From the sequence record MZ475893.1: DNA of 64,000 nt. One strand, written 5' to 3'. The notes under the pieces were generated by a model that made no database searches, was not told where the DNA came from, and worked only from the letters and a program-made list of their open reading frames with translations. Both the position numbers and the translations under genes were made by a program. Each line of letters starts with the position of its first letter. Position 1 is the stretch's first letter. Positions 10,439 through 44,552 of this stretch are shown piece by piece.

Positions 10439-11025
10439 TGGATTTATCTTCTATCGGCTATGCAAACAAACCATTTCGCGTTATCCCTGTTACTTCTGGT
10501 AATATCGTAACTGATTTCATTGCCGGAAAGTTTCAGGTGATTGGCGTTGAGTGTAATGCTCGTGGTGCGTATGGCTCGCCGATTCAACAAAGCATTGCAC
10601 GCCGCTTCCCTGACGTGTTGCAGAAGATGAACGCGCTCGACTACGACCACCAGAACTTCATGGGCAGCACGTTGATGCATCCTGTGCAGACTCAGCACCG
10701 TCGTCGTTTGTTTGTCGCTAACATGTTCCTTGCACGCGGCTTTGGGTTAGGCCAGAATCGCACTCAAAGTGAAGGTCCGATTAATCGTTTCAGTGAACGA
10801 CACTTGACGCAAGCCTTCGACAGTCTTGTTGATAGCTGTGCATCACTCAACATTAGTCTGGACCGCCAGATTGCTGTGCAGCGTTTCTACGGCGGTCTTG
10901 GTGGGGTATCTTGGGAAGAAGTATGTGAAGTGCTGGACGCTATTTGCGCCAAGCATAAATTCAACATGCTGGCTTATCTGCCTAAGAACTATAACTCTAA
11001 CTTTGTGCGGGGTTCTGCGCAATAA
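10438..11025 (+). CDS. macrodomain protein (Poa1p/DarG-like, ADP-ribose processing)
   Basis: GNIVTD, ECNARGAYGSPIQQSIARRFP (cf. NCxGxMGxGIA...FP), IAVQRFYGGLGGVSWEEV (cf. IAxPxIGxGLGGLxW). Confidence 0.7.
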   Translation: MDLSSIGYANKPFRVIPVTSGNIVTDFIAGKFQVIGVECNARGAYGSPIQQSIARRFPDVLQKMNALDYDHQNFMGSTLMHPVQTQHRRRLFVANMFLARGFGLGQNRTQSEGPINRFSERHLTQAFDSLVDSCASLNISLDRQIAVQRFYGGLGGVSWEEVCEVLDAICAKHKFNMLAYLPKNYNSNFVRGSAQ

Positions 11026-11037
11026 CTCTGGGGTGTA

Positions 11038-11373
11038 TTGATGAATACAATACGCGGTTTTGATTGGCTTTTTTATGAGGATGGCACCGACAGTGGCCAA
11101 CACTCTGTTTTAAATATCGTCTGTGATCCACAGACTAAATCAATGCAGGTAGAAGTTCGAAAGGGATGCGCCGCACCTGTAATTCAAGCAATTCAGGAAA
11201 ATGAAATCCTGTATGCTCAGACCGATGAAGGACTTTATCGAGTTCGTTATCGTTGTTCGTTTAAGCATCTTGCAGCGAACGCATTTCCTCCAGAGATGAC
11301 AGTGATCAAGTTGAAGTTGCTTGCACTCGACTTTCTTCCGGGCGTTACTACGCACGATAAACCTTTGGACTAA
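11038..11373 (+). CDS. hypothetical protein
   Basis: 111 aa ORF in operon. Confidence 0.65.
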   Translation: MMNTIRGFDWLFYEDGTDSGQHSVLNIVCDPQTKSMQVEVRKGCAAPVIQAIQENEILYAQTDEGLYRVRYRCSFKHLAANAFPPEMTVIKLKLLALDFLPGVTTHDKPLD

Positions 11374-11378
11374 CCGCC

Positions 11379-12101
11379 ATGATTACAGCGAAACACATTG
11401 AAAGCCGTTTAAGAACAATAGACTATACCAAGCCTAATCCTGATCGGGAAATGCTTGTGGCGCTTGTGTCTGATGGACGTTCTCGTATTTTGAAGACAGC
11501 ACAGATCGATGGTCTGTGTCCGCTGTCTGATAAGTATTTTGAGTTCTGCCTCAGCCAGGTCGGCTCTTTCTGCACGGCAGGTTACAACGCTGTGGAGATT
11601 GCAATGTCTATCGGTGTTCAGCCTATCTATGTCGCAGCGCACATCCATCTGCATGGCTGCGATTGGGCACACAGACTTTTAGGCTTGAAGCGATTTGCTG
11701 CGCTTGCTCGTGGTCCACATACTGTGTGGTCATCAGGTGAAGCGTGGTTCGCTTTGGGTGAATGCCAGCGCCGCTCTAAGCTGCACTATGGCACTTCAAG
11801 CGGGCAGGAAGCATTGCGCAAAGCAATCCAAAAAGCAGAGATGCCTTATGTGCTTGCTGCCGCTGTCACACATCCCCATCGTCTCATGAGCATTCTCCGT
11901 CCGCGTGATGGGCTGTTGTATCGTGACCCACGTATTGAGAAGACGCTGAAACAACGTGAGAAAGCCGCTGCTGATGCAAAGGCGGAAGGCCGTTCTGTGC
12001 TAACGACTGAGAAGCGTAGCGAGTACGGCGACATGGGTAAGTTGTTTAACGGTCATCTGTCGCGTGCTGACAAGACAGGTAACCCTCGCGTAACTGAATA
12101 A
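11379..12101 (+). CDS. hypothetical protein
   Basis: 240 aa ORF in operon. Confidence 0.7.
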   Translation: MITAKHIESRLRTIDYTKPNPDREMLVALVSDGRSRILKTAQIDGLCPLSDKYFEFCLSQVGSFCTAGYNAVEIAMSIGVQPIYVAAHIHLHGCDWAHRLLGLKRFAALARGPHTVWSSGEAWFALGECQRRSKLHYGTSSGQEALRKAIQKAEMPYVLAAAVTHPHRLMSILRPRDGLLYRDPRIEKTLKQREKAAADAKAEGRSVLTTEKRSEYGDMGKLFNGHLSRADKTGNPRVTE

Positions 12102-12111
12102 GGAACGTATC

Positions 12112-12492
12112 GTGGATAAGAATGAAATCACGTTGTTGATTGACAGTCTGAACGGCAATCGCAATTTCCCAATCGATCCAGAAGCTGCAATAGGCATGAC
12201 CCTTGAACAGTTCATCAAAACCAATGGGAACTTTGTGTTTCTCATGAATGATGCGCTCGTCCGTGACATGGTAAGTAAGCAGCATGAGTACGATCCAAAC
12301 TTCGTACCAGCTACTACTCTCGACGAAATCAACAACGGTCTTATGGGAACTTTCCACGGCGTCAATGTGTACAGCACTTGGGTGTATCGTGCTCCTGGGG
12401 ATCTGCCTGCGGAAGCGAAGCCTCGTTTCGGTATGTATCGCGCCGACCTAAAACAAATCTTCCCGTTGACTAAACATTTTATCGTAAAGTAA
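12112..12492 (+). CDS. hypothetical protein
   Basis: 126 aa, GTG start, AAGGA RBS. Confidence 0.65.
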   Translation: MDKNEITLLIDSLNGNRNFPIDPEAAIGMTLEQFIKTNGNFVFLMNDALVRDMVSKQHEYDPNFVPATTLDEINNGLMGTFHGVNVYSTWVYRAPGDLPAEAKPRFGMYRADLKQIFPLTKHFIVK

Positions 12493-12504
12493 AACTGTTT
12501 ACGG

Positions 12505-12510
12505 TAATTT
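12505..12510 (+). promoter_or_regulatory. TAATTT motif
   Basis: Intergenic, 33 nt before cmoA-like ATG. Confidence 0.35.
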
Positions 12511-12543
12511 CTGAAGGTCAATCAGAATAACGGAATCCTCATC

Positions 12544-13314
12544 ATGAGCAATATCGATACCACAATGCCTGAAGGCAAATGGGAGTTCAATGAGTCGGTT
12601 GCTTGCGTGTTTGATAACATGCTGCAAAACTCTATCCCGTCTTATGGCCGTATGCGTGACCTGACGTATCGTCTGGGTCGTCGCTTCGTAACCCCGGGTT
12701 CAGCTATCGTCGATCTCGGTGCTTCACTCGGCCGAGCTATCGAGCCGTTTGCAAAAGAGTTCGGCAAGTATGACTACCATCATGCTGCTGACGCTCCTGG
12801 CGAAGACTACGAAACAGGCAATCACTATAGCCTGTTCGAAGTAGCGCCTGCGATGCGTGAACGTCTGGTGCAGAATGAAGTGCTCAACTCAGTGAATGCC
12901 AAACTGGAAAGTGAATCGCTGGTAGATACTGACACGTTTATGTTCGACGGTCAGGTGCATTGCTCGTTGATTCTGAGTGTGCTAACTCTCCAGTTCACGC
13001 CGATTGAACATCGTCAACACATTCTGGAAAACGTGTACAACTCACTGCAACCAGGCGGCGCATTCATCCTCGTTGAGAAGGTGTTAGGCGATAACAACTA
13101 TCTCGACAAAATGCTGGTGGACACCTACTACCAAATGAAAGGCGGTAACGGTTACAGCGCCGAGTCGATTGCGACTAAACGTAAGTCACTGGAAGGTGTA
13201 CTCGTTCCTGTTAAAGCAGCGTGGAACGAAGAACTGTTGCGTAAAGCAGGCTTCGGTCAGGTAGAAAGTTTCTATCGCGACCTGAACTTCGCAGGATGGA
13301 TTGCTATTAAGTAA
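12544..13314 (+). CDS. cmoA: carboxy-S-adenosyl-L-methionine synthase (CmoA-like)
   Basis: WEFNESVACVFDNMLQNSIPSY, DLGASLG, TLQF, LQPGGAFILVEK, KRKSLEGVL (Arg aligning with E. coli R199), AGF...NF at C-terminus; collinear with E. coli CmoA along its length. Confidence 0.85.
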   Translation: MSNIDTTMPEGKWEFNESVACVFDNMLQNSIPSYGRMRDLTYRLGRRFVTPGSAIVDLGASLGRAIEPFAKEFGKYDYHHAADAPGEDYETGNHYSLFEVAPAMRERLVQNEVLNSVNAKLESESLVDTDTFMFDGQVHCSLILSVLTLQFTPIEHRQHILENVYNSLQPGGAFILVEKVLGDNNYLDKMLVDTYYQMKGGNGYSAESIATKRKSLEGVLVPVKAAWNEELLRKAGFGQVESFYRDLNFAGWIAIK

Positions 13315-13323
13315 GGAAATACT

Positions 13324-14586
13324 ATGAAAGTAAACGGGCGTATCTTAGCTATCGTCCCACACAAGACAATGCAAGACCGTACCAAGTCGGGTGTGGGTTC
13401 GTACATTGATGGACTAGAGGCATACGGCTTCTGCGACTTTATCACGGACGGAGAGAACAGCTCCGTTGCGAAAAGTCAGTGGTTCACTTACGGTGATACT
13501 ACTCTCAGTGACGGTTATAAGATAGGGCATATCCAGAGCGAGTTGCTGATTGCACTTGAGCGCTTGCCTTACCGTGCGATTATTTGCAGCACGTATGAGG
13601 CGATTGAAGCCTGCGTGTCTCTGGGACTGCCAAAGATTATGCCCGTTTACTATCGCACGCACAACAGCTTTTTGCTCACACAAGATCTCAAGGGTCTTGG
13701 TGCAGAGAAGATCCACCGTGCGTTGTTGCAAGCACGCGTCACAGGGCTGCGCATCCTTGCTAACTGTGATTCGACTGCGATCAATCTTGCTGAGCGCTAT
13801 AAGACGCCAGCACACGTTGCCTACAACTCGTTCTCGGTGCCTGACTACAACCCACCAGCTCGGCGTGTTCCCCAGCTGTTGATTATCTGTCGCTATGAGA
13901 AGGTCAAGCGCACGTTGTTTGCTGCGCGTATTGCTGCTGCCTCAGGATTACCCGTTCGTGTTATGACAGGCAGTGATCGTCAAGTACGCAATTGGGAGAA
14001 AGAGCTGGCTGAGGCGGGTGTCAAAGAATACACCGTCGTCAGTGGCCTTAGTGGTAAACAGAAACTCGAATTTATAGGCGCTTGCACAGTAGCCCTTTCT
14101 ACTGCGAGCGTTGAATCTTTTGCTAACGGTGTGCGTGAGTCTATCCCCTACTGTCCTACCTTTATCGTGCAAACATCCAAGTACGATTGGGCTAAGGACT
14201 ATACGCGCTTCTGTACTGCCGACAAGCATGTTCATATCAGAACTGTTGATCGCGTATCGGACCAAGCCGTAGCTGAAATCGGAAGTGAGATAGCGCGAGT
14301 TGCCACCACACGTTATCTGACAGGTCCGCAGCGTAAACAACTACTGACTGCTTGGGCAAAGCAAGTTGATCGTGGTTGGTCCGACTTTGTTCAGAAGGCT
14401 GTTGTTGACGATGACGGCAAGCCGCTGCGCACCGAGCTATATCAAGAACTGATCGACAAATCAGAAATCGATTGGTCACAAACGCCTACGCTAATGCGTA
14501 CTGTAAATGCGTTACATAAATGCCACGCTCGTTTGGGCCTGACATTTGATGGCACTAAAATCAAATATAAGAGGAAGCGCAAATGA
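13324..14586 (+). CDS. GT-B (GT4-like) glycosyltransferase
   Basis: N-terminal SGVGSY, ILANCDSTA, LLIICRYEKVKR, SVESFANGVRESI (cf. ExFGxxxxEA). Confidence 0.7.
   Translation: MKVNGRILAIVPHKTMQDRTKSGVGSYIDGLEAYGFCDFITDGENSSVAKSQWFTYGDTTLSDGYKIGHIQSELLIALERLPYRAIICSTYEAIEACVSLGLPKIMPVYYRTHNSFLLTQDLKGLGAEKIHRALLQARVTGLRILANCDSTAINLAERYKTPAHVAYNSFSVPDYNPPARRVPQLLIICRYEKVKRTLFAARIAAASGLPVRVMTGSDRQVRNWEKELAEAGVKEYTVVSGLSGKQKLEFIGACTVALSTASVESFANGVRESIPYCPTFIVQTSKYDWAKDYTRFCTADKHVHIRTVDRVSDQAVAEIGSEIARVATTRYLTGPQRKQLLTAWAKQVDRGWSDFVQKAVVDDDGKPLRTELYQELIDKSEIDWSQTPTLMRTVNALHKCHARLGLTFDGTKIKYKRKRK
14501..14508 (+). promoter_or_regulatory. CTGTAAAT motif
   Basis: 74 nt before ATG 14583. Confidence 0.4.
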
Positions 14587-15659
14587 GTGTTATCGGTGAT
14601 ATTTATAACATACCACAACCTTTCGCAATGTATGTCGGGAATTGTGAGACGCGTGCTCAAGCCAAAGTTGCTGCTGGTACAATCGAGTGGGCGCCAGAGA
14701 AAGTGTGCTGCACCGTAGATGATGGTAACAACCTGTTCCCCAACGTACCTTCAATCAACCCTGCTGACGTGCATAAGACAGATGCAGAAACTTTAGTGAT
14801 TGGCTGTGCACCTTTCGGCGGCCGCATTGACGAGCACATGGACAAAGCTATTCGTAGCGCTATCTATCGTGGACGCAACATTGCTGCTGCTATGCATACG
14901 CGCCTGGCGGATAATCCCGAATACGTTGAGCTGGCTGATCGCTACAACGTCAAGCTGTATGACTTCCGTCATCGTCCTGATGCGTACCCACTTGGTACCG
15001 GTGAGAAGCGTAGCGGTCTGCGTCTGTTAACTGTCGGTACTGATAGCTCCTGCGGCAAGAAGTTTACCACGCTATCTCTGTATCGTGAACTCAAGCGCAT
15101 CCACGCAGACACTGTGTTTTGCTCTACTGGGCAAACAGGCTTCCTGATTAGCGGTTGCGGTATCAACAACGACACGATTGTTGCTGACTTCCTCGCCGGT
15201 GCTGCTGAATCACTTTCGCCTGCTGGTCCTGCTGATCGTATCTATCTGATTGAAGGTCAAGGTGCTATCACTCACCCAGCATACACAGGCGGTAGCATGA
15301 GTCTGATTGCCGGCTCGCAGCCTGATCATCTCATCCTGTGCCACGCATGGAACCGTCAGAATCAGTTGGGCGTTAAGCGTAAGCCTGACCTTGATTTTGA
15401 GATGCGTGCTAATATTGAAGCGGCGCGTATTCACGGTCTCCACCCGACCTACATCGGTATCAGCATTAACTTCTCTGAGTGTGATTTGACACAGGACGAG
15501 CAAGATAAAATCCTGTACCAACTCGCATCAACGTATGAGATTCCCGTGTTCGACCCATCACAAGACACTTCTGTGTTGCGTGACCTCGCTCGTATGTTAG
15601 CAACTAAAGCCAAAGCAAGGAGCCTCGATGGCCAAGCATCCCCTGCGCAAGCTGTTTGA
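14583..15659 (+). CDS. DUF1611 family protein (P-loop fold; DgcN-like)
   Basis: LVIGCAPFGG, AAAMH, LTVGTDSSCGKKFT, STGQTG, ADFLAGAAE, IEGQGAITHPAY, GSQPDHLILCH. Confidence 0.85.
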   Translation: MSVIGDIYNIPQPFAMYVGNCETRAQAKVAAGTIEWAPEKVCCTVDDGNNLFPNVPSINPADVHKTDAETLVIGCAPFGGRIDEHMDKAIRSAIYRGRNIAAAMHTRLADNPEYVELADRYNVKLYDFRHRPDAYPLGTGEKRSGLRLLTVGTDSSCGKKFTTLSLYRELKRIHADTVFCSTGQTGFLISGCGINNDTIVADFLAGAAESLSPAGPADRIYLIEGQGAITHPAYTGGSMSLIAGSQPDHLILCHAWNRQNQLGVKRKPDLDFEMRANIEAARIHGLHPTYIGISINFSECDLTQDEQDKILYQLASTYEIPVFDPSQDTSVLRDLARMLATKAKARSLDGQASPAQAV

Positions 15660-16503
15660 ACAGCATGTGAAAAAAGAAGTGAAAGCAGACAAGGTAGCTG
15701 TGCTGCTTTCATCTGGCCTCGATGGTTTGGTCAGTGCGTTAGCTGCACACGATCTCGGTAAGAAGGTGCACGCCTTCACTTTCCAAATGGGTGACAACCC
15801 TAGCTTTGACAGTCGCCACGCACAGATTGTTGCGCAGAAGATGGGGTGGGAGTTCACTCTCGTTAAAGTTCCCACCAGCGTGTCTGCTATCGCATTAGCG
15901 TGGCGCGTGCTGCATTCCAAGTATCGCTGCATTAAGAAGCGTGACTACGAGTGTGCGTACCCTATGGTCTATTGCTACAAGGCAATCAAAGACGCTGGGT
16001 ACAAGTATGTGCTAAGCGGGCTGGTGGCCGATGGTTACTTCCTGTATAACCGTAACACGCATATTCAGAAAATCAGCGGGCCACACTCTGACGCTCAGAA
16101 GTATCATGAGTTCCGTACTCAATACTTTAGTCCGTGGCTTAAACACGGTAAGAAGTCTCTGGGCGTTGACGGGTATAACCCGAGCGGCATGTTGCAGCAT
16201 GAGATGTTGTGCGATAACTTCGGCCTGATTCACGTTAACCCGTGGATGCAAAACAAGGTGTTTGACTACTTCATCAAATACACTTGGCAGGAGTTGAATC
16301 AGCCTAAGCAGAAGATGCCACTAACCGAAGCGTGGGCAGAACACATTGCTCTTGTTGGTCATCGTCCACACAGGGGCTATCAGACAGAAGCCAAAGTGCC
16401 TGAATACTTTGAGCATCTGATCGAGAACCCTGAGATTAACTTCAACGGGCGCAAGCGCATCATGGACGTGGCACGCGACTGGTCCAAACGAGAGCCTGAA
16501 TAA
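15628..16503 (+). CDS. asparagine-synthetase-like ATP-dependent amide ligase, synthetase domain only
   Basis: PP-loop VAVLLSSGLDG, HAFTF, VLSGLVADGYF (cf. SGxGADE), NPW...QKMPL; no N-terminal Cys-glutaminase domain. Confidence 0.8.
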   Translation: MAKHPLRKLFEQHVKKEVKADKVAVLLSSGLDGLVSALAAHDLGKKVHAFTFQMGDNPSFDSRHAQIVAQKMGWEFTLVKVPTSVSAIALAWRVLHSKYRCIKKRDYECAYPMVYCYKAIKDAGYKYVLSGLVADGYFLYNRNTHIQKISGPHSDAQKYHEFRTQYFSPWLKHGKKSLGVDGYNPSGMLQHEMLCDNFGLIHVNPWMQNKVFDYFIKYTWQELNQPKQKMPLTEAWAEHIALVGHRPHRGYQTEAKVPEYFEHLIENPEINFNGRKRIMDVARDWSKREPE

Positions 16504-16758
16504 ATGCATCCTGTTATCACAGACTTTCTTGGGCCTATCGTTAAGCGGCTGGGCTTATTCACTGCTATATTCGGTTTTGTCGGCGTGCTGCTGTCTGTGA
16601 TCGCAGTGCTTGTGTGCCGCCCAGAAGTCCTTCAATACGAATACGATACTGTAAATAGACTTCGTACTGAGGGTATTGTATTCTTGGGTAAAGGCGCTCT
16701 CGTTTACATCGTAGGCGAGATACTTGAAGGCACGTTCAAGTGGAGAAAAGATGATTAA
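16504..16758 (+). CDS. small membrane protein
   Basis: 84 aa with two hydrophobic stretches. Confidence 0.6.
   Translation: MHPVITDFLGPIVKRLGLFTAIFGFVGVLLSVIAVLVCRPEVLQYEYDTVNRLRTEGIVFLGKGALVYIVGEILEGTFKWRKDD
16649..16656 (+). promoter_or_regulatory. CTGTAAAT motif
   Basis: 94 nt before ATG 16751. Confidence 0.35.
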
Positions 16759-17014: not shown

Positions 17015-17021
17015 GGCCATA

Positions 17022-17474: not shown

Positions 17475-17488
17475 AACAAGGAGCATAT

Positions 17489-18222: not shown

Positions 18223-18223
18223 G

Positions 18224-19088: not shown

Positions 19089-19092
19089 CGAT

Positions 19093-19100
19093 CTGTAAAT
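19093..19100 (+). promoter_or_regulatory. CTGTAAAT motif
   Basis: Intergenic, 4 nt after terminator, 30 nt before ATG 19131. Confidence 0.6.
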
Positions 19101-19130
19101 AACTCGTATAACATCTAACGAGAAACTACC

Positions 19131-19532
19131 ATGAGACCTGAAAACATTTCACGCACCTATCGCGTCGGTCAGTCTGACCTGGAGAAAGCACACAATGTCT
19201 GCGGAGAGAACAATGTAACACTCTCAGATGTGGTGCGCAGATACATCGAAAGAATCGTACTGACTGAGGGTGAGTTCCTTATGAACGAGCGTAAGCACGT
19301 ACCTGAGCCCCAACTGAATGTACGCCTGCCCTTTTATATTGCGCACTCCTTTGCATCTGTGTGTAAGTCTCGTGGTACGTTAGCCTCTAAAACCATTCTC
19401 AACTTTGTCAAGAATATTGCTCTTTCCGGGACTATCCCTGAGGAGTTAAAGTATGCTTCTGACGCAGAGTTGCGTGCCTATATTACCTCAGAGCGCTCTC
19501 GCCTCGATGCACTGGAAGCAAAACTCAAATGA
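19131..19532 (+). CDS. putative tandem ribbon-helix-helix regulator
   Basis: RTYRV...TLSDVVRRYIERI and LNVRL...ASKTILNFV, two RelB-like RHH patterns. Confidence 0.5.
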   Translation: MRPENISRTYRVGQSDLEKAHNVCGENNVTLSDVVRRYIERIVLTEGEFLMNERKHVPEPQLNVRLPFYIAHSFASVCKSRGTLASKTILNFVKNIALSGTIPEELKYASDAELRAYITSERSRLDALEAKLK

Positions 19533-20368
19533 TTCTAACTAGTCCCATTCGCTATCAGGGTAACAAGCGCACTCTGATGCCTCTTATTCTCGAACATGCG
19601 CCTGTGAAGGATTGCGTTCGCATGATAGACGCATTCGGTGGTAGTGGTACTGTTGCGCTCAACATGCCTCACAAGTTTCGCATCTACAATGAACTGAGCA
19701 CGCCTGTGTTTGAGATCGTCCAGTTGCTTGCGCATCAAGACCCGAAGAAAACATTGGGTCAGATTAAGCGCATCGTCAAGCGTTTTTGTCTAACCAATAG
19801 CAGCCAAGACAACTACGACATGTTCCGCGCGTATGTTCAGAAGAAGCCGAGTCCGTTGTTCCATTACATCGCACACAGGCACGCACGCTCTAACATGCTG
19901 CGCTTCAACCAGAAAGGCATCTACAACGTGCCGTTCGGTGAGCGTGGCCTGATTGGAAAGTTCGATCAGCTTGAGCAGGAGCTGGTGCAGTTCCATGAAC
20001 GTATGCAGAACACGCACATCACCAACATGCGCTATAACCTGTTGCTCAAGTCTGTGTCAAAGCATATCGGACCGAACACGTTCATTTACTTTGACCCTCC
20101 ATATCTTGCTAGTGGTGCAATGCAATACGGTAAGTGGACTGAGCACAACGAACGCAACCTGCTGTCCGTACTTGAGTATCTGAATCGTCAAGGCTGCCCG
20201 TGGATGTTGAGCAACGTTCTCCAACATCGGCACCACACGAACGACCTGCTCAAGCGCTGGCTAAAGAAACACGCAACGACTGTCATCTATCCTGACAAGT
20301 CTTATTCAATGGCCAACTCTCATTCTGATAGTCACAGCACTATCGAGATTCTGGCAATGAACTACTGA
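19529..20368 (+). CDS. dam: DNA adenine methyltransferase (Dam/D12 class)
   Basis: RYQGNK, DAFGGSGTV, RFNQKGIYNVPFG, YFDPPY. Confidence 0.92.
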   Translation: MILTSPIRYQGNKRTLMPLILEHAPVKDCVRMIDAFGGSGTVALNMPHKFRIYNELSTPVFEIVQLLAHQDPKKTLGQIKRIVKRFCLTNSSQDNYDMFRAYVQKKPSPLFHYIAHRHARSNMLRFNQKGIYNVPFGERGLIGKFDQLEQELVQFHERMQNTHITNMRYNLLLKSVSKHIGPNTFIYFDPPYLASGAMQYGKWTEHNERNLLSVLEYLNRQGCPWMLSNVLQHRHHTNDLLKRWLKKHATTVIYPDKSYSMANSHSDSHSTIEILAMNY

Positions 20369-27730: not shown

Positions 27731-28831
27731 ATGACAGGTCCTCTCGATCTCACTAACCCACAGCACTTCGAACTGTACTCGCTGCACAGTGTTGATGCAC
27801 AGTATATCAATCTGTGTGACGCACTCCTAACGCAGGGTACGCACGAATCTGACCCAGAGCGCACTGACGATACGTGGCATACGCTGATCGGTATTGGCTT
27901 CCAGTTGTCTAACACCAACATCGCTTTCCCTGCGCTGCTGTCTAAGCGTGTCAACGTCCGTGCAGCTATCGATGAATCCTGCTGGTTCGCACGCGGTGAA
28001 ACGAACATCGCAACTCTCGGTTCTAAAATCTGGAACGAGTGGGCAGATGAAGAAGGTGAGAACGGTCCTATCTACGGCTTCCAGTACCGTAACTGGCCTG
28101 ACATTAAAGTGTTCAACACTGTCGAAGGCATGATTGAGCAGCACATCCCACCAGCGATGATTGAGCGCATCTCGAAAGAGATTAACCGCATGAAGGCGCA
28201 GGGCTATATCGAAACTGCGTTGCCTGACGGTCGCGTGTTGTACGAAGGCTATATCGATCAGTACGCTGATGCACTGCGTCAAATCATGGCGCGTAGTCGT
28301 AGCCGCCGCATTCGTGTGCAAGCGTTCAACCCAGGTTACGTTGGTATGCAGAGCCTGCCGCCGTGTCATACCGAGTTTGAGTTCAACGTGACCAAAGCCA
28401 CTGCGTATGAGATTGCGCAGATGGAAGCACGCTCAATGCGCCCTGACGCTGACTCACTGCATATCGTGGTGACGATGCGCAGCAATGACGCGCTATTGGG
28501 CAGGCCCTTCAATATCGTGGGCTACAGCGCCATGCACCAGTTGTTTGCGAAGTGGGCTGGTCTGAACGTTGGTTCGTTTACTCTGAACGTGACCAATATG
28601 CACATGTACGATCACCACCGCGAAGCGTATGCACAACAGCGTGAGCAGTGGCTGGAGCTACAGACGCAGATGCAGACGACAGGCAAACCTGTTGTTTACC
28701 CTACCCTCGAAATCACTGACGACATTCTGGGCCTGACGCCAGAAGAGCTGCTGGATAACGTCAACGTCGATTGGTTCGAGCTGGTGGACTACTCTCCTAA
28801 ACCTGCTGTTAAAGGACGCGTAACCAAATGA
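27731..28831 (+). CDS. thyA: thymidylate synthase
   Basis: LLSKRV, IWNEWAD, GPIYGFQYR, SRRI, LPPCH, RSNDALLGRPFN, NMHMYDHH. Confidence 0.93.
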   Translation: MTGPLDLTNPQHFELYSLHSVDAQYINLCDALLTQGTHESDPERTDDTWHTLIGIGFQLSNTNIAFPALLSKRVNVRAAIDESCWFARGETNIATLGSKIWNEWADEEGENGPIYGFQYRNWPDIKVFNTVEGMIEQHIPPAMIERISKEINRMKAQGYIETALPDGRVLYEGYIDQYADALRQIMARSRSRRIRVQAFNPGYVGMQSLPPCHTEFEFNVTKATAYEIAQMEARSMRPDADSLHIVVTMRSNDALLGRPFNIVGYSAMHQLFAKWAGLNVGSFTLNVTNMHMYDHHREAYAQQREQWLELQTQMQTTGKPVVYPTLEITDDILGLTPEELLDNVNVDWFELVDYSPKPAVKGRVTK

Positions 28832-30830: not shown

Positions 30831-31529
30831 ATGGCAAAAATTGCTAAAGCAAAGGAAGGGAAAAAGAAAAGCAACCCTATGTTGATTGACCTGAAAAAGT
30901 TCAAGTCAGTTAAACAGCTTAAGGGTGCGAAGTACAACCCTCGTTTCATTACAGACAGCCGACTGAGAGCGCTCGAAGGTTCTTTGGGCAGCTTCGGTGA
31001 TTTGTCTGGCGTGGTGTTCAACAACAGCGTAGACAGTGGCGTGCTGATCTCAGGCCACCAGCGTCTCAAGTCGATTGAGAAGTGGGACTCGCGCATTGAG
31101 ATTCAGCAAACGTCTGACAAGTACGGCACGGTAGCGCTGGGTTATATCCATGCCACCAGCGCCAAAGGTAAAACGATCAGCATCCCACTGCGTATCGTTA
31201 ACTGGTCAGATAAGAAAGTGGAGTTTGCTGCTAACATTGCTGCGAATGCCCACGGCGGTGAGTTCGATAACAAAAAGCTCGCGTCACTTGTCGAGAAGCT
31301 GGACCTGACTACAATCAAGCCAGCACTTATCGGGCTTGACCCGTTAGAGATTCGCGGCCTGCAACAGACGCTGAGCAAACAAGCTATCGTCGAGCAGGAA
31401 AAGCGTGTTGGTAAAACAACAGGCAAAATGAACGGCAGCACCGGCGAGTTCAAAGAGTACACGACTGATGAAGTTGGTACTGCGCTGACCTGCACCTGCC
31501 CACGTTGTGGCTTTAAGTTCGAGGGATAA
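30831..31529 (+). CDS. ParB/sulfiredoxin-like N-terminal domain protein with C-terminal CPxCG
   Basis: YNPRFI, LISGHQRL, NAHGGEFD, CTCPRCGFKF. Confidence 0.75.
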   Translation: MAKIAKAKEGKKKSNPMLIDLKKFKSVKQLKGAKYNPRFITDSRLRALEGSLGSFGDLSGVVFNNSVDSGVLISGHQRLKSIEKWDSRIEIQQTSDKYGTVALGYIHATSAKGKTISIPLRIVNWSDKKVEFAANIAANAHGGEFDNKKLASLVEKLDLTTIKPALIGLDPLEIRGLQQTLSKQAIVEQEKRVGKTTGKMNGSTGEFKEYTTDEVGTALTCTCPRCGFKFEG

Positions 31530-31530
31530 C

Positions 31531-33666
31531 ATGATCATCAAGCCGCCTACAATGAAAGAGATTAATAAGCTGCCCAAGCCTTGGTCAGGTATGAGTTTCT
31601 TTGCAGGTTGCGGTGGTTCATCTACCGGTCACAAGATGGCCGGTATTAACATCCTACTGAGCAACGAGTTCGTGGACGCGGCTCGTGAATCGTATGAAGC
31701 GAACCATCCAACAACCAAAGTGTTGCCCCACGATATTCGTCGTCTTGACCCGAAAAAGCTGCTTAGCTATTGCGGCCTGAGCCAAGGCGAACTGGACTTG
31801 CTTGACGGCAGTCCTCCGTGCTTTACCGAAGACACGTTCATTCATACTGACACTGGTATGAAGTTCATCACTGATATGCGCATCGGTGACTTCGCTATGA
31901 CCTCTGTTGGTAAGTATCATCCTGTGTATGACACGATGGTGCGCCCGTATGACGGTCAGATGCACAGAATTGAAACGCTGCTCGGTCAGAACAATGCAAC
32001 ACCTGAGCATCCATTCTTTGTTCGTCGTCAGAATGAAGAAACTGGCGGGTACAGTGAGCCGTTCTGGTGTGACGCTAAAGATGTGCAGGAAGGCGATTTG
32101 TTGGGTACGCCTCGTGTTACGCCTGACATGGGTGAAGCACACACGCATGAGATTATCTCGTCGTTGACTGCGCAGCTTGTGCGTTGGATTGCATTGCCTG
32201 AGTTTTGGTGGCTGATTGGTCACTGGTGCAATCGCGGTGCAATCGATAAGATTCGTGGTGTCGATGTTATTCAGTTCACCTCGATGACAGCGATGGAAAA
32301 CTCGCTGGTGGAACAAGCGTTCGACGTGCTCAAGTTAAGCAGCATCAACAGCGCTTCGTCCGACATGGGCGTTCACCGTAAGACCGTCCGTGTTGTTATG
32401 GACACAGACCTGTTGCTGTTCTTGCGTATGTTTATCGCACAGGGCAAGAAGTCTATGTCCCGCCGTATGCCAGGCATGATCTTCCATCTGGCCAAAGAGC
32501 TGAAACAGCAATTCATTCTCGGCTATCTGGGTCGTGATTACGTCACAGCAATGGGCGTTGGTCATGCGTTAGAGGCTGACTCAAAGCGCTTCCTCGTTGA
32601 GATGAATTACCTGTGCTGCTCTGCGTTCAACAGACCGCTGTTCGATGCAATGTTGTTCACTGACTTGCATTACGGCAGTCCTATGTTACCGCCGAGTCGC
32701 TTCATCACCAAAGAGCACATTGGCTTCCTGTTCTTACAAGAAGAGGTTAATTTCTTCTTTGAGTTCGAGCCGGAAGACCCGCATCTGTGGGTAGAAGTGA
32801 TTGAGAACTTTACGCACCATGAAACGTGCAACGTCTACAACTTCTCAGTCAGTGTTGATGAGACGTATGTTGCTAACGGTATGGTCGTGCATAACTGCAA
32901 AGGGTTCTCGACTGCGGGTGTGAAAGAAGACGGCTGGGGCAAAGAGGTTAAGTACAGCGGCAACAAGTATCAGCAAGTCGATGACCTGTTCGATCAGTAT
33001 TGCCGTATGCTCAAGCACATGCAGCCTAAAACGTTCACTGCGGAAAACGTTAGTGGCCTCGTTAAAGGTGCGTCGAAGGGTTACTTCATTGAAATCATGA
33101 AGACCTTTGATCAGCTAGGCTACTATGTGCGAGCACCGTTGCTTAATGCTGCGTGGCTCGGTGTGCCTCAGTCGCGTGAGCGTATCATCTTTATGGGTGT
33201 GCGCAAAGACGTGGCTAAAGCACTCGGCTATAAGACTGCGTTGACTGCTGTGCCTGATGTAACACCTCAATCAAGCATGGCGTTCCTTGCAGATGCACTG
33301 CCGAACATTCGTCGGTATAAAGGTACGGAGCGTGACATTATCAAGTATCTGCCTGCTGTTAACGGGCCGATGCCTACGATTACCGCTGCTGACGCTATCG
33401 CATACGAAACAGCACGCTTCTCCTCTGCTGGCTTCATTGAAGACGACAAAGGGCACAGACGCAAGCTGACGATTGACGAACTCAAAGTTGTATCAGGCAT
33501 GCCTAGTGATTACGTGCTCACAGGTAAGTTTGAAGAACAATGGGAACGTCTCGGTCGTGTGTGCGTACCTGCAATGACGTGTGCAGCGGCAAGCGCGTTG
33601 ATACGCCATGTGCTTGAGCCGTACGCGAAGCTGCGTAAAAAGAAACCTGGGGATCGTTTTCGTTAA
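31531..33666 (+). CDS. C5-cytosine DNA methyltransferase family enzyme, intein-containing; candidate carboxymethyltransferase
   Basis: FFAGCGG (I), NEF (II), DIRRL (III), GSPP-intein-CKGFS (IV), ENVSGL (VI), QSRERI (VIII), RKLTIDE (IX), LGRVCVP (X, Asn replaced by Arg). Confidence 0.9.
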   Translation: MIIKPPTMKEINKLPKPWSGMSFFAGCGGSSTGHKMAGINILLSNEFVDAARESYEANHPTTKVLPHDIRRLDPKKLLSYCGLSQGELDLLDGSPPCFTEDTFIHTDTGMKFITDMRIGDFAMTSVGKYHPVYDTMVRPYDGQMHRIETLLGQNNATPEHPFFVRRQNEETGGYSEPFWCDAKDVQEGDLLGTPRVTPDMGEAHTHEIISSLTAQLVRWIALPEFWWLIGHWCNRGAIDKIRGVDVIQFTSMTAMENSLVEQAFDVLKLSSINSASSDMGVHRKTVRVVMDTDLLLFLRMFIAQGKKSMSRRMPGMIFHLAKELKQQFILGYLGRDYVTAMGVGHALEADSKRFLVEMNYLCCSAFNRPLFDAMLFTDLHYGSPMLPPSRFITKEHIGFLFLQEEVNFFFEFEPEDPHLWVEVIENFTHHETCNVYNFSVSVDETYVANGMVVHNCKGFSTAGVKEDGWGKEVKYSGNKYQQVDDLFDQYCRMLKHMQPKTFTAENVSGLVKGASKGYFIEIMKTFDQLGYYVRAPLLNAAWLGVPQSRERIIFMGVRKDVAKALGYKTALTAVPDVTPQSSMAFLADALPNIRRYKGTERDIIKYLPAVNGPMPTITAADAIAYETARFSSAGFIEDDKGHRRKLTIDELKVVSGMPSDYVLTGKFEEQWERLGRVCVPAMTCAAASALIRHVLEPYAKLRKKKPGDRFR
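31819..32895 (+). mobile_element. intein (359 aa) in catalytic PC motif, degenerate LAGLIDADG region
   Basis: Starts CFTEDTFI, block B ATPEHPFF, remnant WLIGHWCNRG and FILGYLGRD, ends YNFSV...VANGMVVHN followed by +1 Cys. Confidence 0.92.
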
Positions 33667-43834: not shown

Positions 43835-44552
43835 CATTAAGTTTGGTAGTCCGCTACCTGATATGTCACAGAAGCTGGGCGAAGAAATCATCAAGGGTCG
43901 TATCGCCATACCTAACACGTTGTGGGAATTGCATATTCAGTCCAATGTGCAGCTTCGTCCTATGACGGAGTTGGATATGGCGCTGACAAATACACTGAAC
44001 GGCTCATGGACTTACGTGCCCAAATACTTGGGTCCAGCGCGAGCAATGCGTCAGGCATACAGCTTAGGCCGAACTGTGACAAGCGATGAGCCTCGTGCAG
44101 GCTATGAATTGCTGTTGAACCAAATGACCCGTCAGGCGGAGCAGCAATTCTTCTACAAGCCTCTGGGTGTGTTGCGCGATCATCTGCTCGTTGACGGTAA
44201 AATCCGTATGCCTAAGCGCTGGCATGTTGAGATTGGTCCGAAGTTTGCACTGACTGTTGCCTCCTCCTCGTTTGAGACGTTCCTCAATCTGGTAGATCAT
44301 CAGGAGATGCTGCGTACCATATACGATATGCTATCAACAGCGCTAGATAACAACGATCCCGCGAATGTCCCACACGTGGTATGTTCTGATAGTTCTCGCG
44401 GTCCTACGGAGGTGCATGTGCTGAACACGCAAGCAACTCCTCCAGCAGGGTCTGTCAATATGACCAATACTTTCAGATTCCTGCTGCATCCAATCGGTCA
44501 TGATCTGACGCAAGACAGACTTCAGGACTATTTGGAATCTGTAAATAACTGA
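43815..44552 (+). CDS. hypothetical protein
   Basis: 245 aa. Confidence 0.7.
   Translation: MTSNLSDIKFGSPLPDMSQKLGEEIIKGRIAIPNTLWELHIQSNVQLRPMTELDMALTNTLNGSWTYVPKYLGPARAMRQAYSLGRTVTSDEPRAGYELLLNQMTRQAEQQFFYKPLGVLRDHLLVDGKIRMPKRWHVEIGPKFALTVASSSFETFLNLVDHQEMLRTIYDMLSTALDNNDPANVPHVVCSDSSRGPTEVHVLNTQATPPAGSVNMTNTFRFLLHPIGHDLTQDRLQDYLESVNN
44539..44546 (+). promoter_or_regulatory. CTGTAAAT motif
   Basis: 51 nt before ATG 44598. Confidence 0.5.

What the first reader, a model, noticed from the sequence alone, without database searches (positions are those of the whole stretch)
12544..13314. Phage-encoded CmoA-like Cx-SAM synthase heading an operon
Seen: collinear similarity to E. coli CmoA, including SIPSY (Tyr), DLGASLG, TLQF and KRKSLE (Arg at 13180-13182, aligning with the CmoA arginine that contacts the carboxylate). 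Some cofactor-contact positions diverge (NFTLQF becomes VLTLQF). It has its own upstream TAATTT motif. Inference: it supplies Cx-SAM for phage DNA rather than host tRNA wobble modification.
Basis: partly seen in the sequence, partly recalled or inferred. Interest (0 to 1): 0.7.

Follow-up and report, generated by a model that had tools for sequence, protein, structure and literature searches.

The report
Phage Cx-SAM DNA hypermodification gene module
This Erwinia jumbo-phage gene is a CmoA-type carboxy-SAM synthase that most likely feeds a recently described pathway putting carboxymethyl groups on phage DNA cytosines, here with two extra enzymes that point to a more elaborate, still uncharacterised modified base.

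Summary
It is a CmoA homolog: TIGR00740 scores E 1e-39 but falls below NCBI's cutoff. The best solved structure is E. coli CmoA, and the model has pLDDT 92. Window Arg213 aligns with Ec Arg199, the only contact to the Cx-SAM carboxylate.

The window matches Erwinia amylovora jumbo phage pEa_SNUABM_45 at 100% identity over the 5 kb tested. The DNA interpretation is supported by context. A CmoY-type amide ligase lies three genes downstream. A ParB-like gene plus a CmoX-type C5 cytosine transferase lie 18 kb downstream; the CmoX homolog carries the diagnostic Arg and is interrupted by an intein at its catalytic Cys. No CmoB or tRNA gene was found in a 96%-identical genome.

This CmoA/CmoX/CmoY pathway was published for cyanophage S-B43 in December 2025, so the core idea is known. 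The new element is a GT4-fold glycosyltransferase and a DUF1611 (DgcN-like) protein between cmoA and cmoY. Both are kept inside the module, in different gene orders, in distant phages. Sister phages swap these accessory genes.

Prediction: a glycosylated or acylated amide of 5-carboxymethylcytosine. Nothing here is biochemically tested.

The parts
12503..12510 (+). GGTAATTT element in the 51-bp gap upstream of cmoA. It is a candidate phage promoter element; its function is unverified.
   Evidence: TAATTT copies are concentrated in intergenic DNA, with 8 of 13 copies in 8.3% of the bases, and six lie 29-39 nt upstream of start codons. GGTAATT is invariant upstream of cmoA in Snuvirus, Yoloswag and AD1. 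There is no sigma-70-like promoter or terminator here.
12544..13314 (+). CmoA-type carboxy-S-adenosyl-L-methionine (Cx-SAM) synthase, 256 aa
   Evidence: TIGR00740 scores E 1.2e-39, below its cutoff. PHROG 4752 scores 6e-78. 4GEK scores E 4.1e-28 by sequence. The AlphaFold model has pLDDT 92.3 and its best PDB match is 4GEK, with TM 0.78/0.87. R213 equals Ec R199. It is 28% identical (E 3e-25) to the biochemically validated S-B43 CmoA.
13324..14586 (+). GT-B fold, GT4-like glycosyltransferase, 420 aa. It is an accessory enzyme of the module; its donor and acceptor are unknown.
   Evidence: No Pfam, NCBIfam or PHROG hit. The model has pLDDT 82.5 and pTM 0.82. Foldseek matches GT4 enzymes SdgB, BshA, MshA and GlgM at E 1e-9 to 1e-11 with TM 0.5-0.6. 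E264-x7-E272 is invariant in the family. Only 7 relatives were found, all at cmoA loci.
14583..15659 (+). DUF1611 protein, 358 aa, of the DgcN-like family of acetyl-CoA-dependent amino-acid N-acyltransferases. It is an accessory enzyme of the module.
   Evidence: PF07755 scores 1.4e-46 and PF17396 scores 5.7e-18. NCBIfam DgcN scores 4.9e-85 and 285 bits, below the 480 cutoff. PDB 7xrj scores 6.8e-50. In the phage collection it occurs in 34 records, all Erwinia or Dickeya jumbo phages; in the 30 rows listed the match lies 13-16 kb into the record, or next to cmoA in the reversed record vB_Ea_2910A.
15628..16503 (+). CmoY-type ATP-dependent amide ligase, 291 aa. It resembles the asparagine synthetase C-terminal domain and has no glutaminase domain.
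   Evidence: 33% identity and E 6e-50 over 275 aa to S-B43 CmoY. PF00733 scores 1.7e-13. TIGR01536 matches profile positions 235-394 only.
30831..31529 (+). ParB-like protein immediately upstream of the CmoX homolog
   Evidence: 44% identity and E 4e-50 to the PaBG protein annotated as a ParB-like nuclease domain protein, which also sits directly upstream of PaBG's C5-MTase. Pfam and NCBIfam do not recognise it. PMC12783734 reports ParBc genes in many CmoX neighbourhoods.
31531..33666 (+). CmoX-type DNA cytosine C5-carboxymethyltransferase homolog, a 711-aa precursor interrupted by an intein
   Evidence: PF00145 scores 6e-38 in two pieces. It is 40% identical to S-B43 CmoX and 50% to the PaBG homolog. 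GSPP+C (motif IV), ENV and QxRxR are present. ERLGR676 aligns with S-B43 CmoX R350, the residue that contacts the Cx-SAM carboxymethyl group (PMC12783734).
31819..32895 (+). Intein of 359 aa inserted at the catalytic Cys of motif IV. The +1 Cys (32896-32898) becomes the PC-motif nucleophile after splicing.
   Evidence: The translation reads GSPP|CFTED...TPEH...NGMVVHN|CKGFS. Pfam Intein_splicing scores 1.3e-7 and Hint_2 scores 1.7e-4, both below cutoff. The intein-less PaBG homolog reads GSPPCKSFS. A metagenomic relative carries the same domain order and a sister contig has an intein-less copy.

Best explanation
The ORF encodes a CmoA-family Cx-SAM synthase. It would take SAM and host prephenate and make carboxy-SAM, as E. 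coli CmoA and cyanophage S-B43 CmoA do.

In this Erwinia jumbo phage the cofactor would be used by the phage's own CmoX-type C5 cytosine transferase at 31531..33666. That enzyme must first splice out an intein to restore its catalytic Pro-Cys motif. It would then write 5-carboxymethylcytosine into phage DNA.

The CmoY-type ligase at 15628..16503 would then adenylate that carboxyl and join it to an amine. The two genes wedged between cmoA and cmoY would extend or prepare that side chain. They are a GT4-fold glycosyltransferase and a DUF1611/DgcN-like acyltransferase-family protein. The final base would therefore be a bulkier derivative than the glycine amide of S-B43. The presumed benefit is protection of phage DNA from host nucleases.

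Shown here: the homologies, conserved key residues, gene order and its conservation elsewhere. Inferred: every catalytic activity, the order of steps, the identity of the amine and the sugar, and the protective role.
For: CmoA identity:
- Family and structure matches.
- R213 equals Ec R199, the sole carboxylate contact (PMC4482062).
- Motif I, DLGASLG, is invariant across the family, and an acidic residue (E99) sits where Ec has Asp at the end of strand 2.
- Homology to in-vitro-validated S-B43 CmoA (PMC12783734).

Pathway partners in the same window:
- CmoY homolog at E 6e-50.
- CmoX homolog with SPPC and the R350-equivalent Arg.
- ParB-like neighbour, as reported for CmoX loci (PMC12783734).

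Module behaviour across phages:
- In PaBG the genes are contiguous, in the order ParB-CmoX-CmoA-x-CmoY.
- JA11 lacks all three core genes together (PMC6143709).

Accessory genes belong to the module:
- GT4-like plus DUF1611 lie between the C5-MTase and AsnS-like/CmoA-like genes in unrelated metagenomic contigs with a different gene order (L020/L021). They also lie between CmoA and the ligase in L017.
- All 34 phage records with DUF1611 are Erwinia or Dickeya jumbo phages, and in the rows listed the gene lies at the cmoA locus.
- The ligase type co-varies with DUF1611. Ligases 80-100% identical occur only where DUF1611 is present. Phages without DUF1611 have ligases 23-25% identical, although their CmoA stays about 80% identical.

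Prephenate link: one relative (L017) places a DAHP synthase, the first shikimate-pathway enzyme, next to the module. It scores above NCBI's cutoff.

Against a tRNA role: no CmoB homolog and no tRNA gene were found in the 96%-identical complete genome.
Against: - No biochemical or analytical data exist for this phage or any close relative. I found no report of modified DNA in this phage group.
- The CmoA scores are below NCBI's curated cutoffs.
- cmoA and cmoX are 18 kb apart here rather than adjacent.
- The ligase's PP-loop reads SSGLDG where S-B43 has SGGVDS.
- The window's GT4-like protein has no Pfam hit of its own, and its assignment rests on a predicted structure with TM about 0.55-0.6.
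- The DUF1611 chemistry is known from DgcN only (its NCBIfam name; the acetyl-CoA dependence is from my own recall), and it does not obviously fit an amine already consumed in an amide bond.
- Cx-SAM is diffusible, so host CmoB would also see it.
Confidence: 0.75

Rival explanations
1. The module stops at an S-B43-like product, 5-carboxymethylcytosine amidated with glycine or another amino acid. On this reading the GT4-like and DUF1611 genes serve an unrelated purpose, such as modifying a host envelope component or a metabolite, and merely sit in the same gene block.
For: The core trio alone is sufficient in S-B43 (PMC12783734). PaBG, Y3 and Yoloswag have the core without GT4 or DUF1611. The window's GT4-like protein has no sequence-family hit. 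GT4 enzymes mostly act on small molecules, lipids or proteins.
Against: The two genes are inserted inside the module, with overlapping or 9-nt-spaced reading frames. They are kept inside it in three different gene orders in phages whose CmoA is only 41-59% identical. All phage DUF1611 records are Erwinia or Dickeya jumbo phages, at this locus in the rows listed. The ligase type co-varies with DUF1611.
Confidence: 0.25
2. The phage CmoA mainly raises Cx-SAM for the host CmoB, increasing cmo5U34 in tRNAs and improving decoding of phage mRNAs. This is the classical tRNA role implied by the database label 'tRNA methyltransferase'.
For: CmoA's only cellular role known before 2025 was in tRNA (PMC4482062). 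Cx-SAM is a free cofactor that host CmoB could use. In PaBG, tRNA-Thr(UGU) and tRNA-Ala(UGC) genes lie about 5 kb upstream of the module; from my own knowledge these isoacceptor types carry cmo5U in E. coli.
Against: There is no CmoB homolog and no tRNA gene in the near-identical complete genome, and no tRNA gene in the window. The gene is embedded with a carboxylate-dependent ligase and co-occurs with a C5-MTase homolog bearing the Cx-SAM-selective Arg. cmoA, the ligase and the C5-MTase are lost together in JA11 (PMC6143709). E. coli cmoA and cmoB knockouts show no obvious growth defect (PMC4482062).
Confidence: 0.07
3. The protein is an ordinary SAM-dependent methyltransferase that only resembles CmoA, acting on a small molecule, RNA or protein.
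For: The scores are below the curated CmoA cutoffs. Pfam sees only weak generic methyltransferase domains. The fold is also close to the methyltransferases CysG and BelI, at TM 0.72/0.86. N132 and F133 differ from E. coli.
Against: At sequence level CmoA beats any other solved methyltransferase by more than 20 orders of magnitude. Arg199 is conserved. The validated phage CmoA is equally divergent at N132. The neighbouring ligase needs a carboxylate substrate. A relative links the gene to DAHP synthase, which points to prephenate supply.
Confidence: 0.04
4. The main role is to drain or convert host SAM, as an anti-defence measure analogous to phage SAM lyases, with DNA modification secondary.
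For: PMC12783734 raises this as an open possibility. Phage CmoA was about 10-fold faster than the E. coli enzyme in that study.
Against: Nothing here supports it specifically. It does not explain the conserved linkage with the ligase, the C5-MTase homolog and the accessory genes. The reaction is limited by prephenate supply.
Confidence: 0.04

Closest known systems
CmoA-CmoX-CmoY system of Synechococcus phage S-B43, which makes 5-glycylcarboxymethylcytosine (PMC12783734, Nat Commun, Dec 2025)
   Same: All three core enzymes have homologs in the window. CmoA is 28% identical (E 3e-25), CmoY 33% identical (E 6e-50) and CmoX 40% identical, with SPPC and the R350-equivalent Arg. A ParB-like gene sits next to cmoX, as reported for many CmoX loci. 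The expected logic is the same: Cx-SAM, then 5cxmC in DNA, then amide ligation.
   Different: The host and phage type differ (Erwinia jumbo myovirus against marine cyanophage). The genes are split into two blocks 18 kb apart. cmoX is interrupted by an intein at its catalytic Cys. A GT4-fold glycosyltransferase and a DUF1611 protein are inserted between cmoA and cmoY, and the paper mentions neither. CmoA carries an insertion of about 20 aa and keeps Arg at the Ec R199 column, where S-B43 CmoA aligns a Glu. The product here is unknown.
E. coli CmoA/CmoB tRNA cmo5U34 pathway (PDB 4GEK; PMC4482062)
   Same: Same fold and family for CmoA: 29-31% identity, TM 0.78/0.87, with Arg199, motif I and TLQF conserved. 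The presumed chemistry is the same, SAM plus prephenate giving Cx-SAM.
   Different: There is no CmoB partner in the phage and no phage tRNA. The partner is a DNA C5-methyltransferase homolog instead. N132 is replaced by V and F133 by L. The score is below the equivalog cutoffs.
Glycosylated cytosine hypermodifications of phage DNA, such as arabinosyl-5-hydroxycytosine in RB69, HY126 and DLP3 (PMC13326640). From my own knowledge, T-even glucosyl-5hmC belongs here too.
   Same: A phage-encoded glycosyltransferase accompanies a C5 cytosine modification pathway. A solved 'phage HY126 glycosyltransferase' (9iqz) is among the structural neighbours of the window's GT4-like protein, at E 6e-9 and TM 0.55/0.62.
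   Different: Those systems glycosylate a hydroxyl installed before replication at the nucleotide level. Here the handle would be a carboxymethyl group installed on DNA and extended through an amide, so the sugar acceptor would have to be on the ligated amine. That acceptor is unknown, and no sugar-nucleotide synthesis gene was identified among the module genes or the other window ORFs scanned.
DgcN, a D-glutamate N-acetyltransferase of the DUF1611 family (NCBIfam NF041892; PDB 7xrj)
   Same: The two-domain DUF1611 architecture is matched end to end: 4.9e-85 to the DgcN model and 6.8e-50 to 7xrj.
   Different: The score of 285 bits is far below the 480-bit equivalog cutoff. The context is a phage DNA-modification module, and in sister phages the gene sits beside an alanine-racemase-like gene, not the DgcA racemase. 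The substrate is unknown.

Membership tests
CmoA (Cx-SAM synthase; TIGR00740 / PRK15451) | Scores above NCBIfam's curated equivalog cutoff | tested here: not met
   136.4 bits against a cutoff of 193.3, and 102.7 against 285. CmoA is still by far the best family. The metagenomic relative in L017 scores similarly, at 133.6 bits.
CmoA (Cx-SAM synthase; TIGR00740 / PRK15451) | Class I SAM-methyltransferase fold with the CmoA-specific N-terminal helices, and closest solved structure being CmoA | tested here: met
   The model has pLDDT 92.3. The top six Foldseek PDB hits are E. coli CmoA (4GEK, 4IWN) and H. influenzae YecO (1IM8), with E 3e-22 to 1e-19 and TM 0.75-0.79/0.84-0.90.
CmoA (Cx-SAM synthase; TIGR00740 / PRK15451) | Arg199 (E. 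coli numbering), the only side chain contacting the Cx-SAM carboxylate | tested here: met
   R213 aligns without gaps to 4GEK chain residue 213, which is native R199 (role from PMC4482062). The column is at least 90% Arg in 44 homologs. S-B43 CmoA aligns Glu there and the L021 homolog aligns Lys.
CmoA (Cx-SAM synthase; TIGR00740 / PRK15451) | SAM-binding motif I (D-x-G-x-S-x-G) and an acidic residue at the end of strand 2 | tested here: met
   D57, G59, S61 and G63 are invariant. E99 in FEVAPAM aligns with Asp of E. coli IDNSPAM.
CmoA (Cx-SAM synthase; TIGR00740 / PRK15451) | Converts SAM plus prephenate to Cx-SAM plus phenylpyruvate | not testable with these tools
   Needs an enzyme assay or cofactor co-purification. 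The only indirect support is homology to the assayed S-B43 enzyme and a DAHP synthase gene next to the module in relative L017.
CmoX (DNA cytosine C5-carboxymethyltransferase, PMC12783734) | C5-MTase domain with the SPPC catalytic motif | tested here: met
   PF00145 scores 131.5 bits. GSPP is followed by the intein's first Cys, and the +1 Cys restores GSPPCKGFS after splicing. Splicing itself is inferred.
CmoX (DNA cytosine C5-carboxymethyltransferase, PMC12783734) | Arg at the position of S-B43 CmoX R350 (Asn304 in M.HhaI), which contacts the carboxymethyl group | tested here: met
   ERLGR676 aligns with ERVGR350 of S-B43 and ERLGR of PaBG. The column is invariant in the three-way alignment.
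CmoX (DNA cytosine C5-carboxymethyltransferase, PMC12783734) | Transfers carboxymethyl from Cx-SAM to cytosine C5 in dsDNA | not testable with these tools
   Needs LC-MS of treated DNA or of virion DNA.
CmoY (5cxmC amide ligase, PMC12783734) | Stand-alone asparagine-synthetase-type ATP pyrophosphatase domain, without a glutaminase domain, homologous to S-B43 CmoY | tested here: met
   33% identity and E 6e-50 over 275 of 291 residues. PF00733 scores 1.7e-13. The NCBIfam AsnB model is matched only from position 235 on. The PP-loop reads SSGLDG against SGGVDS in S-B43.
CmoY (5cxmC amide ligase, PMC12783734) | Glycine as the amine substrate | not testable with these tools
   The glycine-pocket residues are given only as figures in the paper. 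The ligase type co-varies with DUF1611, which hints at a different or further-processed amine.
GT4 glycosyltransferases (GT-B fold) | Two-Rossmann-domain GT-B fold and the E-x7-E motif | tested here: met
   Model with pLDDT 82.5. There are 182 PDB matches at E <= 1e-3; all 50 listed are glycosyltransferases or pseudo-glycosyltransferases, mostly GT4. The Swiss-Prot model hits are MshA, GlgM and PIG-A. E264 and E272 are invariant.
GT4 glycosyltransferases (GT-B fold) | Recognised by Pfam Glycos_transf_1 or related models | tested here: not met
   There are no Pfam families even at E <= 1. Only the 38%-identical relative P0127 carries a weak PF00534 hit.
DUF1611 / DgcN | DUF1611_N Rossmann-like domain plus DUF1611 P-loop-like domain | tested here: met
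   PF17396 scores 5.7e-18 and PF07755 scores 1.4e-46. PDB 7xrj, 2obn and 2g0t are matched.
DUF1611 / DgcN | Equivalog-level match to DgcN (D-glutamate N-acetyltransferase) | tested here: not met
   285.4 bits against a cutoff of 480. It is a family member, not a DgcN ortholog.
Class 1 intein | N-terminal Cys, block B TxxH, C-terminal His-Asn followed by a Cys/Ser/Thr extein residue, and insertion at a conserved catalytic site | tested here: met
   CFTED..., TPEH...VVHN|C. The intein-less homolog is continuous across the site. The Pfam Intein_splicing score of 32.0 bits is below the 35.8 cutoff. Splicing activity was not tested.

The most novel reading that the evidence does not exclude
Erwinia and Dickeya jumbo phages of the Y3, Alexandra and Snuvirus lineage carry a family of undescribed cytosine hypermodifications built on 5-carboxymethylcytosine. 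In this phage the carboxyl would be amidated with an amino acid, possibly a D-amino acid given the DgcN-like gene and, in sister phages, an alanine-racemase-like gene. The side chain would then be glycosylated by a GT4-type enzyme, giving a glyco-aminoacyl-carboxymethylcytosine. Sister genera would make different end products by swapping the accessory genes (2OG oxygenase, racemase, presence or absence of the GT).
Probability: 0.35. Interest if true: 0.75.

Novelty: new variant of a known kind. Interest (0 to 1): 0.55.

Why it matters
The core pathway, Cx-SAM as a donor for DNA carboxymethylation, is about a year old and has been characterised in a single cyanophage.

This window shows the same pathway in cultured, easily grown Erwinia phages that are being developed against fire blight. 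It comes with extra enzymes that predict new DNA chemistry. Five gene layouts of the module occur among related isolates: PaBG, Y3/Yoloswag, AD1/Alexandra, this phage and SNUABM_3. JA11 provides a natural module-less control.

That set is a ready-made comparative series. Nucleoside mass spectrometry across it would assign a chemical step to each accessory gene.

For biocontrol use, hypermodified DNA affects host range against restriction systems. It also affects how well the genomes sequence and digest.

The intein at the catalytic Cys of the transferase adds a testable layer, because the enzyme cannot be active until it splices.

Tried and rejected
- **Own genome not held.** Searching the window's own assembly was not possible. 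I used the 96%-identical complete genome NC_061451 instead, so absences (CmoB, tRNA, DAHP synthase, chorismate mutase) are for that relative.
- **Primary CmoA paper not available.** Kim et al. 2013 (Nature) is not in the library. Residue roles were taken from PMC4482062 and PMC10491745.
- **One wasted literature search.** A search for 'DgcN' was swamped by unrelated acronyms. The refined search gave only indirect descriptions.
- **Promoter and terminator scan.** The sigma-70 promoter and intrinsic-terminator scan of 11000-18500 found nothing at the cmoA 5' end. It found fewer promoter-like sites than shuffles did, so it neither supports nor refutes an operon start.
- **Sequencing runs.** Only DNA contig sets and one Illumina metagenome were found, holding at most 38% of the words. 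There was no RNA and no long-read data, so I could not map a transcript start or see modification signals, and read laying was not used.
- **ParB-like protein.** Pfam and NCBIfam do not recognise it. The label rests on homology to PaBG's annotated protein.
- **Possible clash with another pyrimidine pathway.** I considered that the long thymidylate-synthase homolog (27731..28831) might be a pyrimidine hydroxymethylase competing for C5. NCBIfam places it with thymidylate synthases (TIGR03284 above cutoff), so I dropped the idea without further test.
- **Jumbo-phage literature.** The comparative review (PMC7824862) and the PaBG paper (PMC7412058) mention neither CmoA nor any DNA modification by this module.
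Full report
**What is at the coordinates**

The ORF at 12544..13314 (+) is an ATG-started frame of 256 aa. The Arg codon is at 13180-13182.

The start codon is supported by conservation. Asp5 and Pro9 are invariant or nearly invariant among 41 homologs.

The window is 100% identical over the 5 kb tested to Erwinia amylovora jumbo phages pEa_SNUABM_45, 46 and 14, with the same coordinates. It is 96% identical to pEa_SNUABM_7 (genus Snuvirus). RefSeq labels the gene 'tRNA methyltransferase'.

**Is it CmoA?**

- NCBIfam's CmoA equivalog models are the best families: TIGR00740 at E 1.2e-39 and 136.4 bits, PRK15451 at 2.2e-29. Both are below their curated cutoffs of 193.3 and 285.
- Pfam sees only sub-threshold generic methyltransferase domains.
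- PHROG 4752 matches end to end at 6e-78.
- Against all solved structures, the three CmoA/YecO sequences score 4e-28 to 2e-25, and the next methyltransferase scores 1.6e-5.
- An AlphaFold model built on 41 sequences (pLDDT 92.3) has E. coli CmoA 4GEK as its best PDB match (E 2.8e-22, TM 0.78/0.87). H. influenzae YecO follows, and the methyltransferases CysG and BelI come next.

The HMMER alignment to 4GEK is ungapped over residues 139-256. The chain numbering is native +14, which gives these equivalences:
- R213 equals Ec Arg199.
- L147 equals Phe133.
- V146 equals Asn132.

According to PMC4482062, Arg199 is the only residue contacting the carboxylate of Cx-SAM. Phe133 contributes a backbone carbonyl only. 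The key determinant is therefore kept, and the F-to-L change is at a backbone contact.

The experimentally validated S-B43 CmoA has Leu at the N132 column, so that residue is not required. Motif I (D57, G59, S61, G63) is invariant across the family, as are T148, F151, R157, E178 and K179.

Relative to about 236-aa homologs, the protein has an insertion of about 20 aa (roughly aa 77-95). The model shows it as an extra beta-hairpin.

The family is large. There are 3231 clusters at E <= 1e-5, and UniRef already names close members 'Cx-SAM synthase'.

**What the cofactor is for**

A paper from December 2025 (PMC12783734) showed the following in Synechococcus phage S-B43:
- A phage CmoA makes Cx-SAM.
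- A C5-methyltransferase homolog, CmoX, uses it to make 5-carboxymethylcytosine in dsDNA. CmoX has an SPPC motif and an Arg350 that contacts the carboxymethyl group.
- An asparagine-synthetase-like ligase, CmoY, joins glycine to the new carboxyl.
- The authors found thousands of candidate CmoX loci, often with CmoA, ligases and ParBc-domain genes.

All of these have counterparts in this window:
- ORF 15628..16503 is 33% identical to S-B43 CmoY (E 6e-50).
- ORF 31531..33666 is a PF00145 protein (6e-38). It is 40% identical to S-B43 CmoX and 50% identical to the PaBG homolog. It has GSPP-C, ENV, QxRxR and ERLGR676 aligned to R350.
- ORF 30831..31529, directly upstream of it, is 44% identical to PaBG's ParB-like protein.

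In PaBG, whose CmoA is 41% identical by tblastn, the genes are contiguous: ParB-like, C5-MTase, CmoA, a 150-aa ORF, AsnS-like.

Day et al. (PMC6143709) list the methyltransferase, the asparagine synthase and the DNA-cytosine methyltransferase as common to AD1 and Y3 but absent from the related phage JA11. The three genes therefore come and go together.

The near-identical complete genome has no CmoB homolog and no tRNA gene, and the window has no tRNA gene.

It is also no longer new as an idea. No experimental data on DNA modification in this phage group turned up.

**What differs from the published system**

Two genes are wedged between cmoA and cmoY.

The first is ORF 13324..14586 (420 aa):
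- It has no hit in Pfam, NCBIfam or PHROGs, and only seven relatives in 5.8 billion proteins.
- Its model (pLDDT 82.5, pTM 0.82) is a GT-B fold. It matches GT4 glycosyltransferases such as SdgB, BshA, SenB, GlgM and MshA at E 1e-9 to 1e-11.
- The family keeps an invariant E264-x7-E272. From my own knowledge, this is the signature motif of retaining GT4 enzymes.
- A language-model search had pointed the same way.
- One structural neighbour is a glycosyltransferase of phage HY126, a phage with arabinosylated 5-hydroxycytosine DNA (PMC13326640).

The second is ORF 14583..15659:
- It is a full-length DUF1611 protein. It matches the DgcN model at 4.9e-85 but below cutoff, and PDB 7xrj at 6.8e-50.
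- NCBIfam names DgcN an N-acetyltransferase, and dgcN is described as the key gene of a D-glutamate racemisation pathway.

**Do the two extra genes belong to the module?**

Gene-neighbourhood evidence says yes.
- In ENA contigs L020 and L021 the order is C5-MTase, GT-like, DUF1611, AsnS-like, CmoA-like. The CmoA there is 41% identical to the window's.
- In the 58-kb Logan contig L017 the order is CmoA (59% identical), an 84-aa ORF, GT-like, DUF1611, an alanine-racemase-like ORF, AsnS-like, DAHP synthase.
- In the isolate collection, the GT-like gene occurs at this locus in 21 Erwinia records.
- DUF1611 occurs in 34 records, all Erwinia or Dickeya jumbo phages, and at the cmoA locus in the rows listed.

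Within the lineage the accessory content varies:
- PaBG has the core only.
- Y3 and Yoloswag have cmoA, a ligase and a nearby 2OG-Fe(II) oxygenase.
- AD1 and Alexandra have cmoA, DUF1611 and the ligase.
- This phage adds the GT.
- pEa_SNUABM_3 adds the GT and an alanine-racemase-like gene (PF01168 at 4e-14).

The ligase falls into two types. One type is 80-100% identical to the window's and occurs only where DUF1611 is present. The other is only 23-25% identical and occurs in the Y3-like phages. CmoA stays about 80% identical across both groups.

This co-variation suggests that DUF1611 and the ligase share a substrate.

**Most likely mechanism**

The steps below are all inferred unless stated otherwise.
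1. CmoA converts SAM and host prephenate to Cx-SAM.
2. The CmoX precursor splices out its intein. The mature enzyme then carboxymethylates C5 of cytosines in phage DNA, in an unknown sequence context.
3. The CmoY-type ligase adenylates the carboxyl and forms an amide with an amine.
4. The DUF1611 protein and the GT4-like enzyme then modify that appended group, or prepare it beforehand. DUF1611 would act by acyl transfer to a free amine, and the GT by transferring a sugar to a hydroxyl.

The DgcN-like gene, together with the racemase-like gene in sister phages, hints at D-amino-acid chemistry. The amine cannot be named from sequence.

From my own knowledge, the pairing of a GT4 enzyme, an ATP-dependent amide ligase and an N-acetyltransferase recalls the enzyme logic of mycothiol synthesis (MshA, MshC, MshD). 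That is an analogy only.

The DAHP synthase next to the module in L017 scores above NCBI's cutoff. It begins at about position 50 of the profile. It fits a need for prephenate, a point the S-B43 authors flagged as open. This phage has no such gene.

**Operon and promoter question**

Nearly all ORFs called from 31 to about 46200 are on the + strand. The 51-bp gap before cmoA is one of the few gaps between 8857 and 17809. The next four genes are separated by 9, -4, -32 and 0 nt.

TAATTT at 12505-12510 belongs to a hexamer that is rare overall but concentrated in intergenic spacers at a fixed distance from start codons. GGTAATT is conserved upstream of cmoA in three genera.

No sigma-70-type promoter or terminator is found there. 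A transcript start at cmoA is plausible but unproven, and no RNA data were available.

**Verdict**

- The locus is best described as a new variant of that known system. It has the same three-enzyme core, an intein-interrupted transferase, and two conserved accessory enzymes that predict a more complex cytosine hypermodification.
- My confidence in the core assignment is about 0.8. My confidence in the functional involvement of the accessory genes in DNA modification is about 0.5-0.6. My confidence in any specific product is low.

Noticed in passing
window 31819..32895 (within ORF 31531..33666): A 359-aa intein is inserted exactly at the catalytic Cys of motif IV of the CmoX-type C5-methyltransferase, reading GSPP|C...VVHN|CKGFS. 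The enzyme cannot have its Pro-Cys nucleophile until it splices. A metagenomic relative (L020) has the same MTase-Hint-intein-MTase domain order, and a sister contig (L022) has an intein-less 341-aa copy.
   Followed up: partly
L017:12162-13025 (Logan contig, relative with 59% identical CmoA): A phage-encoded DAHP synthase lies directly after the ligase gene of the module. TIGR00034 scores 180 bits against a cutoff of 173. It starts at about profile position 47-54, so it lacks the first ~50 positions of the AroF/G/H profile. DAHP synthase is the entry to the shikimate pathway and hence to prephenate, the CmoA co-substrate. No such gene was found in NC_061451.
   Followed up: partly
L024:3824-4759 (pEa_SNUABM_3) and L017:10322-11287: An alanine-racemase-like gene sits between DUF1611 and the ligase in Alexandravirus SNUABM_3 and in contig L017. 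PF01168 scores 4e-14, the sequence contains VKGNFYGHG, and the two copies are 39% identical. It is absent from this window. Together with the DgcN-like gene, it hints at D-amino-acid chemistry in the hypermodification.
   Followed up: partly
L025:3095-3733 (Y3) and L014:7944-8585 (Yoloswag): Sister phages without DUF1611 or the GT have a 2OG-Fe(II) oxygenase (PF13640 at 1.6e-15) a few genes after cmoA and a ligase of a different type (23-25% identical). This suggests yet another end product in those genera.
   Followed up: partly
alignment A1/A5, column of window R213; L002:5962-6654; L021:3786-4508: The biochemically validated S-B43 CmoA aligns a Glu at the column of E. coli Arg199, reading DKEKELR. 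A metagenomic homolog aligns a Lys there, reading ERKKLSLEG. Either the helix register shifts in those proteins, or Arg199 is not universally required.
   Followed up: no
window 19092..19104 and 44538..44550: A second recurrent intergenic motif, TCTGTAAATAACT, has two exact copies 27-48 nt upstream of the start codons at 19131 and 44598. There are seven matches with up to 2 mismatches, against 1.4 expected. It is possibly a different promoter class from the TAATTT element.
   Followed up: partly
window 27731..28831: The thymidylate synthase homolog is 366 aa, about 100 aa longer than the Pfam and NCBIfam profiles, and it matches in two or three pieces. The nature of the insertion was not examined.
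   Followed up: no
window 19529..20368: A Dam-family N6-adenine DNA methyltransferase with FDPPY (PF02086 at 2.1e-25; TIGR00571 at 114.1 bits against a cutoff of 114.85). The phage probably carries a second, independent DNA modification.
   Followed up: partly
L013:417-3032 (PaBG): In PaBG, tRNA-Thr(UGU) and tRNA-Ala(UGC) genes lie about 5 kb upstream of the ParB-CmoX-CmoA-CmoY block. From my own knowledge, these isoacceptor types carry cmo5U34 in E. coli. This may be coincidence, or a hint that phage Cx-SAM also serves tRNA in that phage.
   Followed up: no
window 16504..16758: An 84-aa ORF with a predicted hydrophobic segment starts at the base after the stop codon of the ligase gene. An 84-aa ORF also sits between cmoA and the GT gene in L017. 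Whether the two are related was not tested.
   Followed up: no
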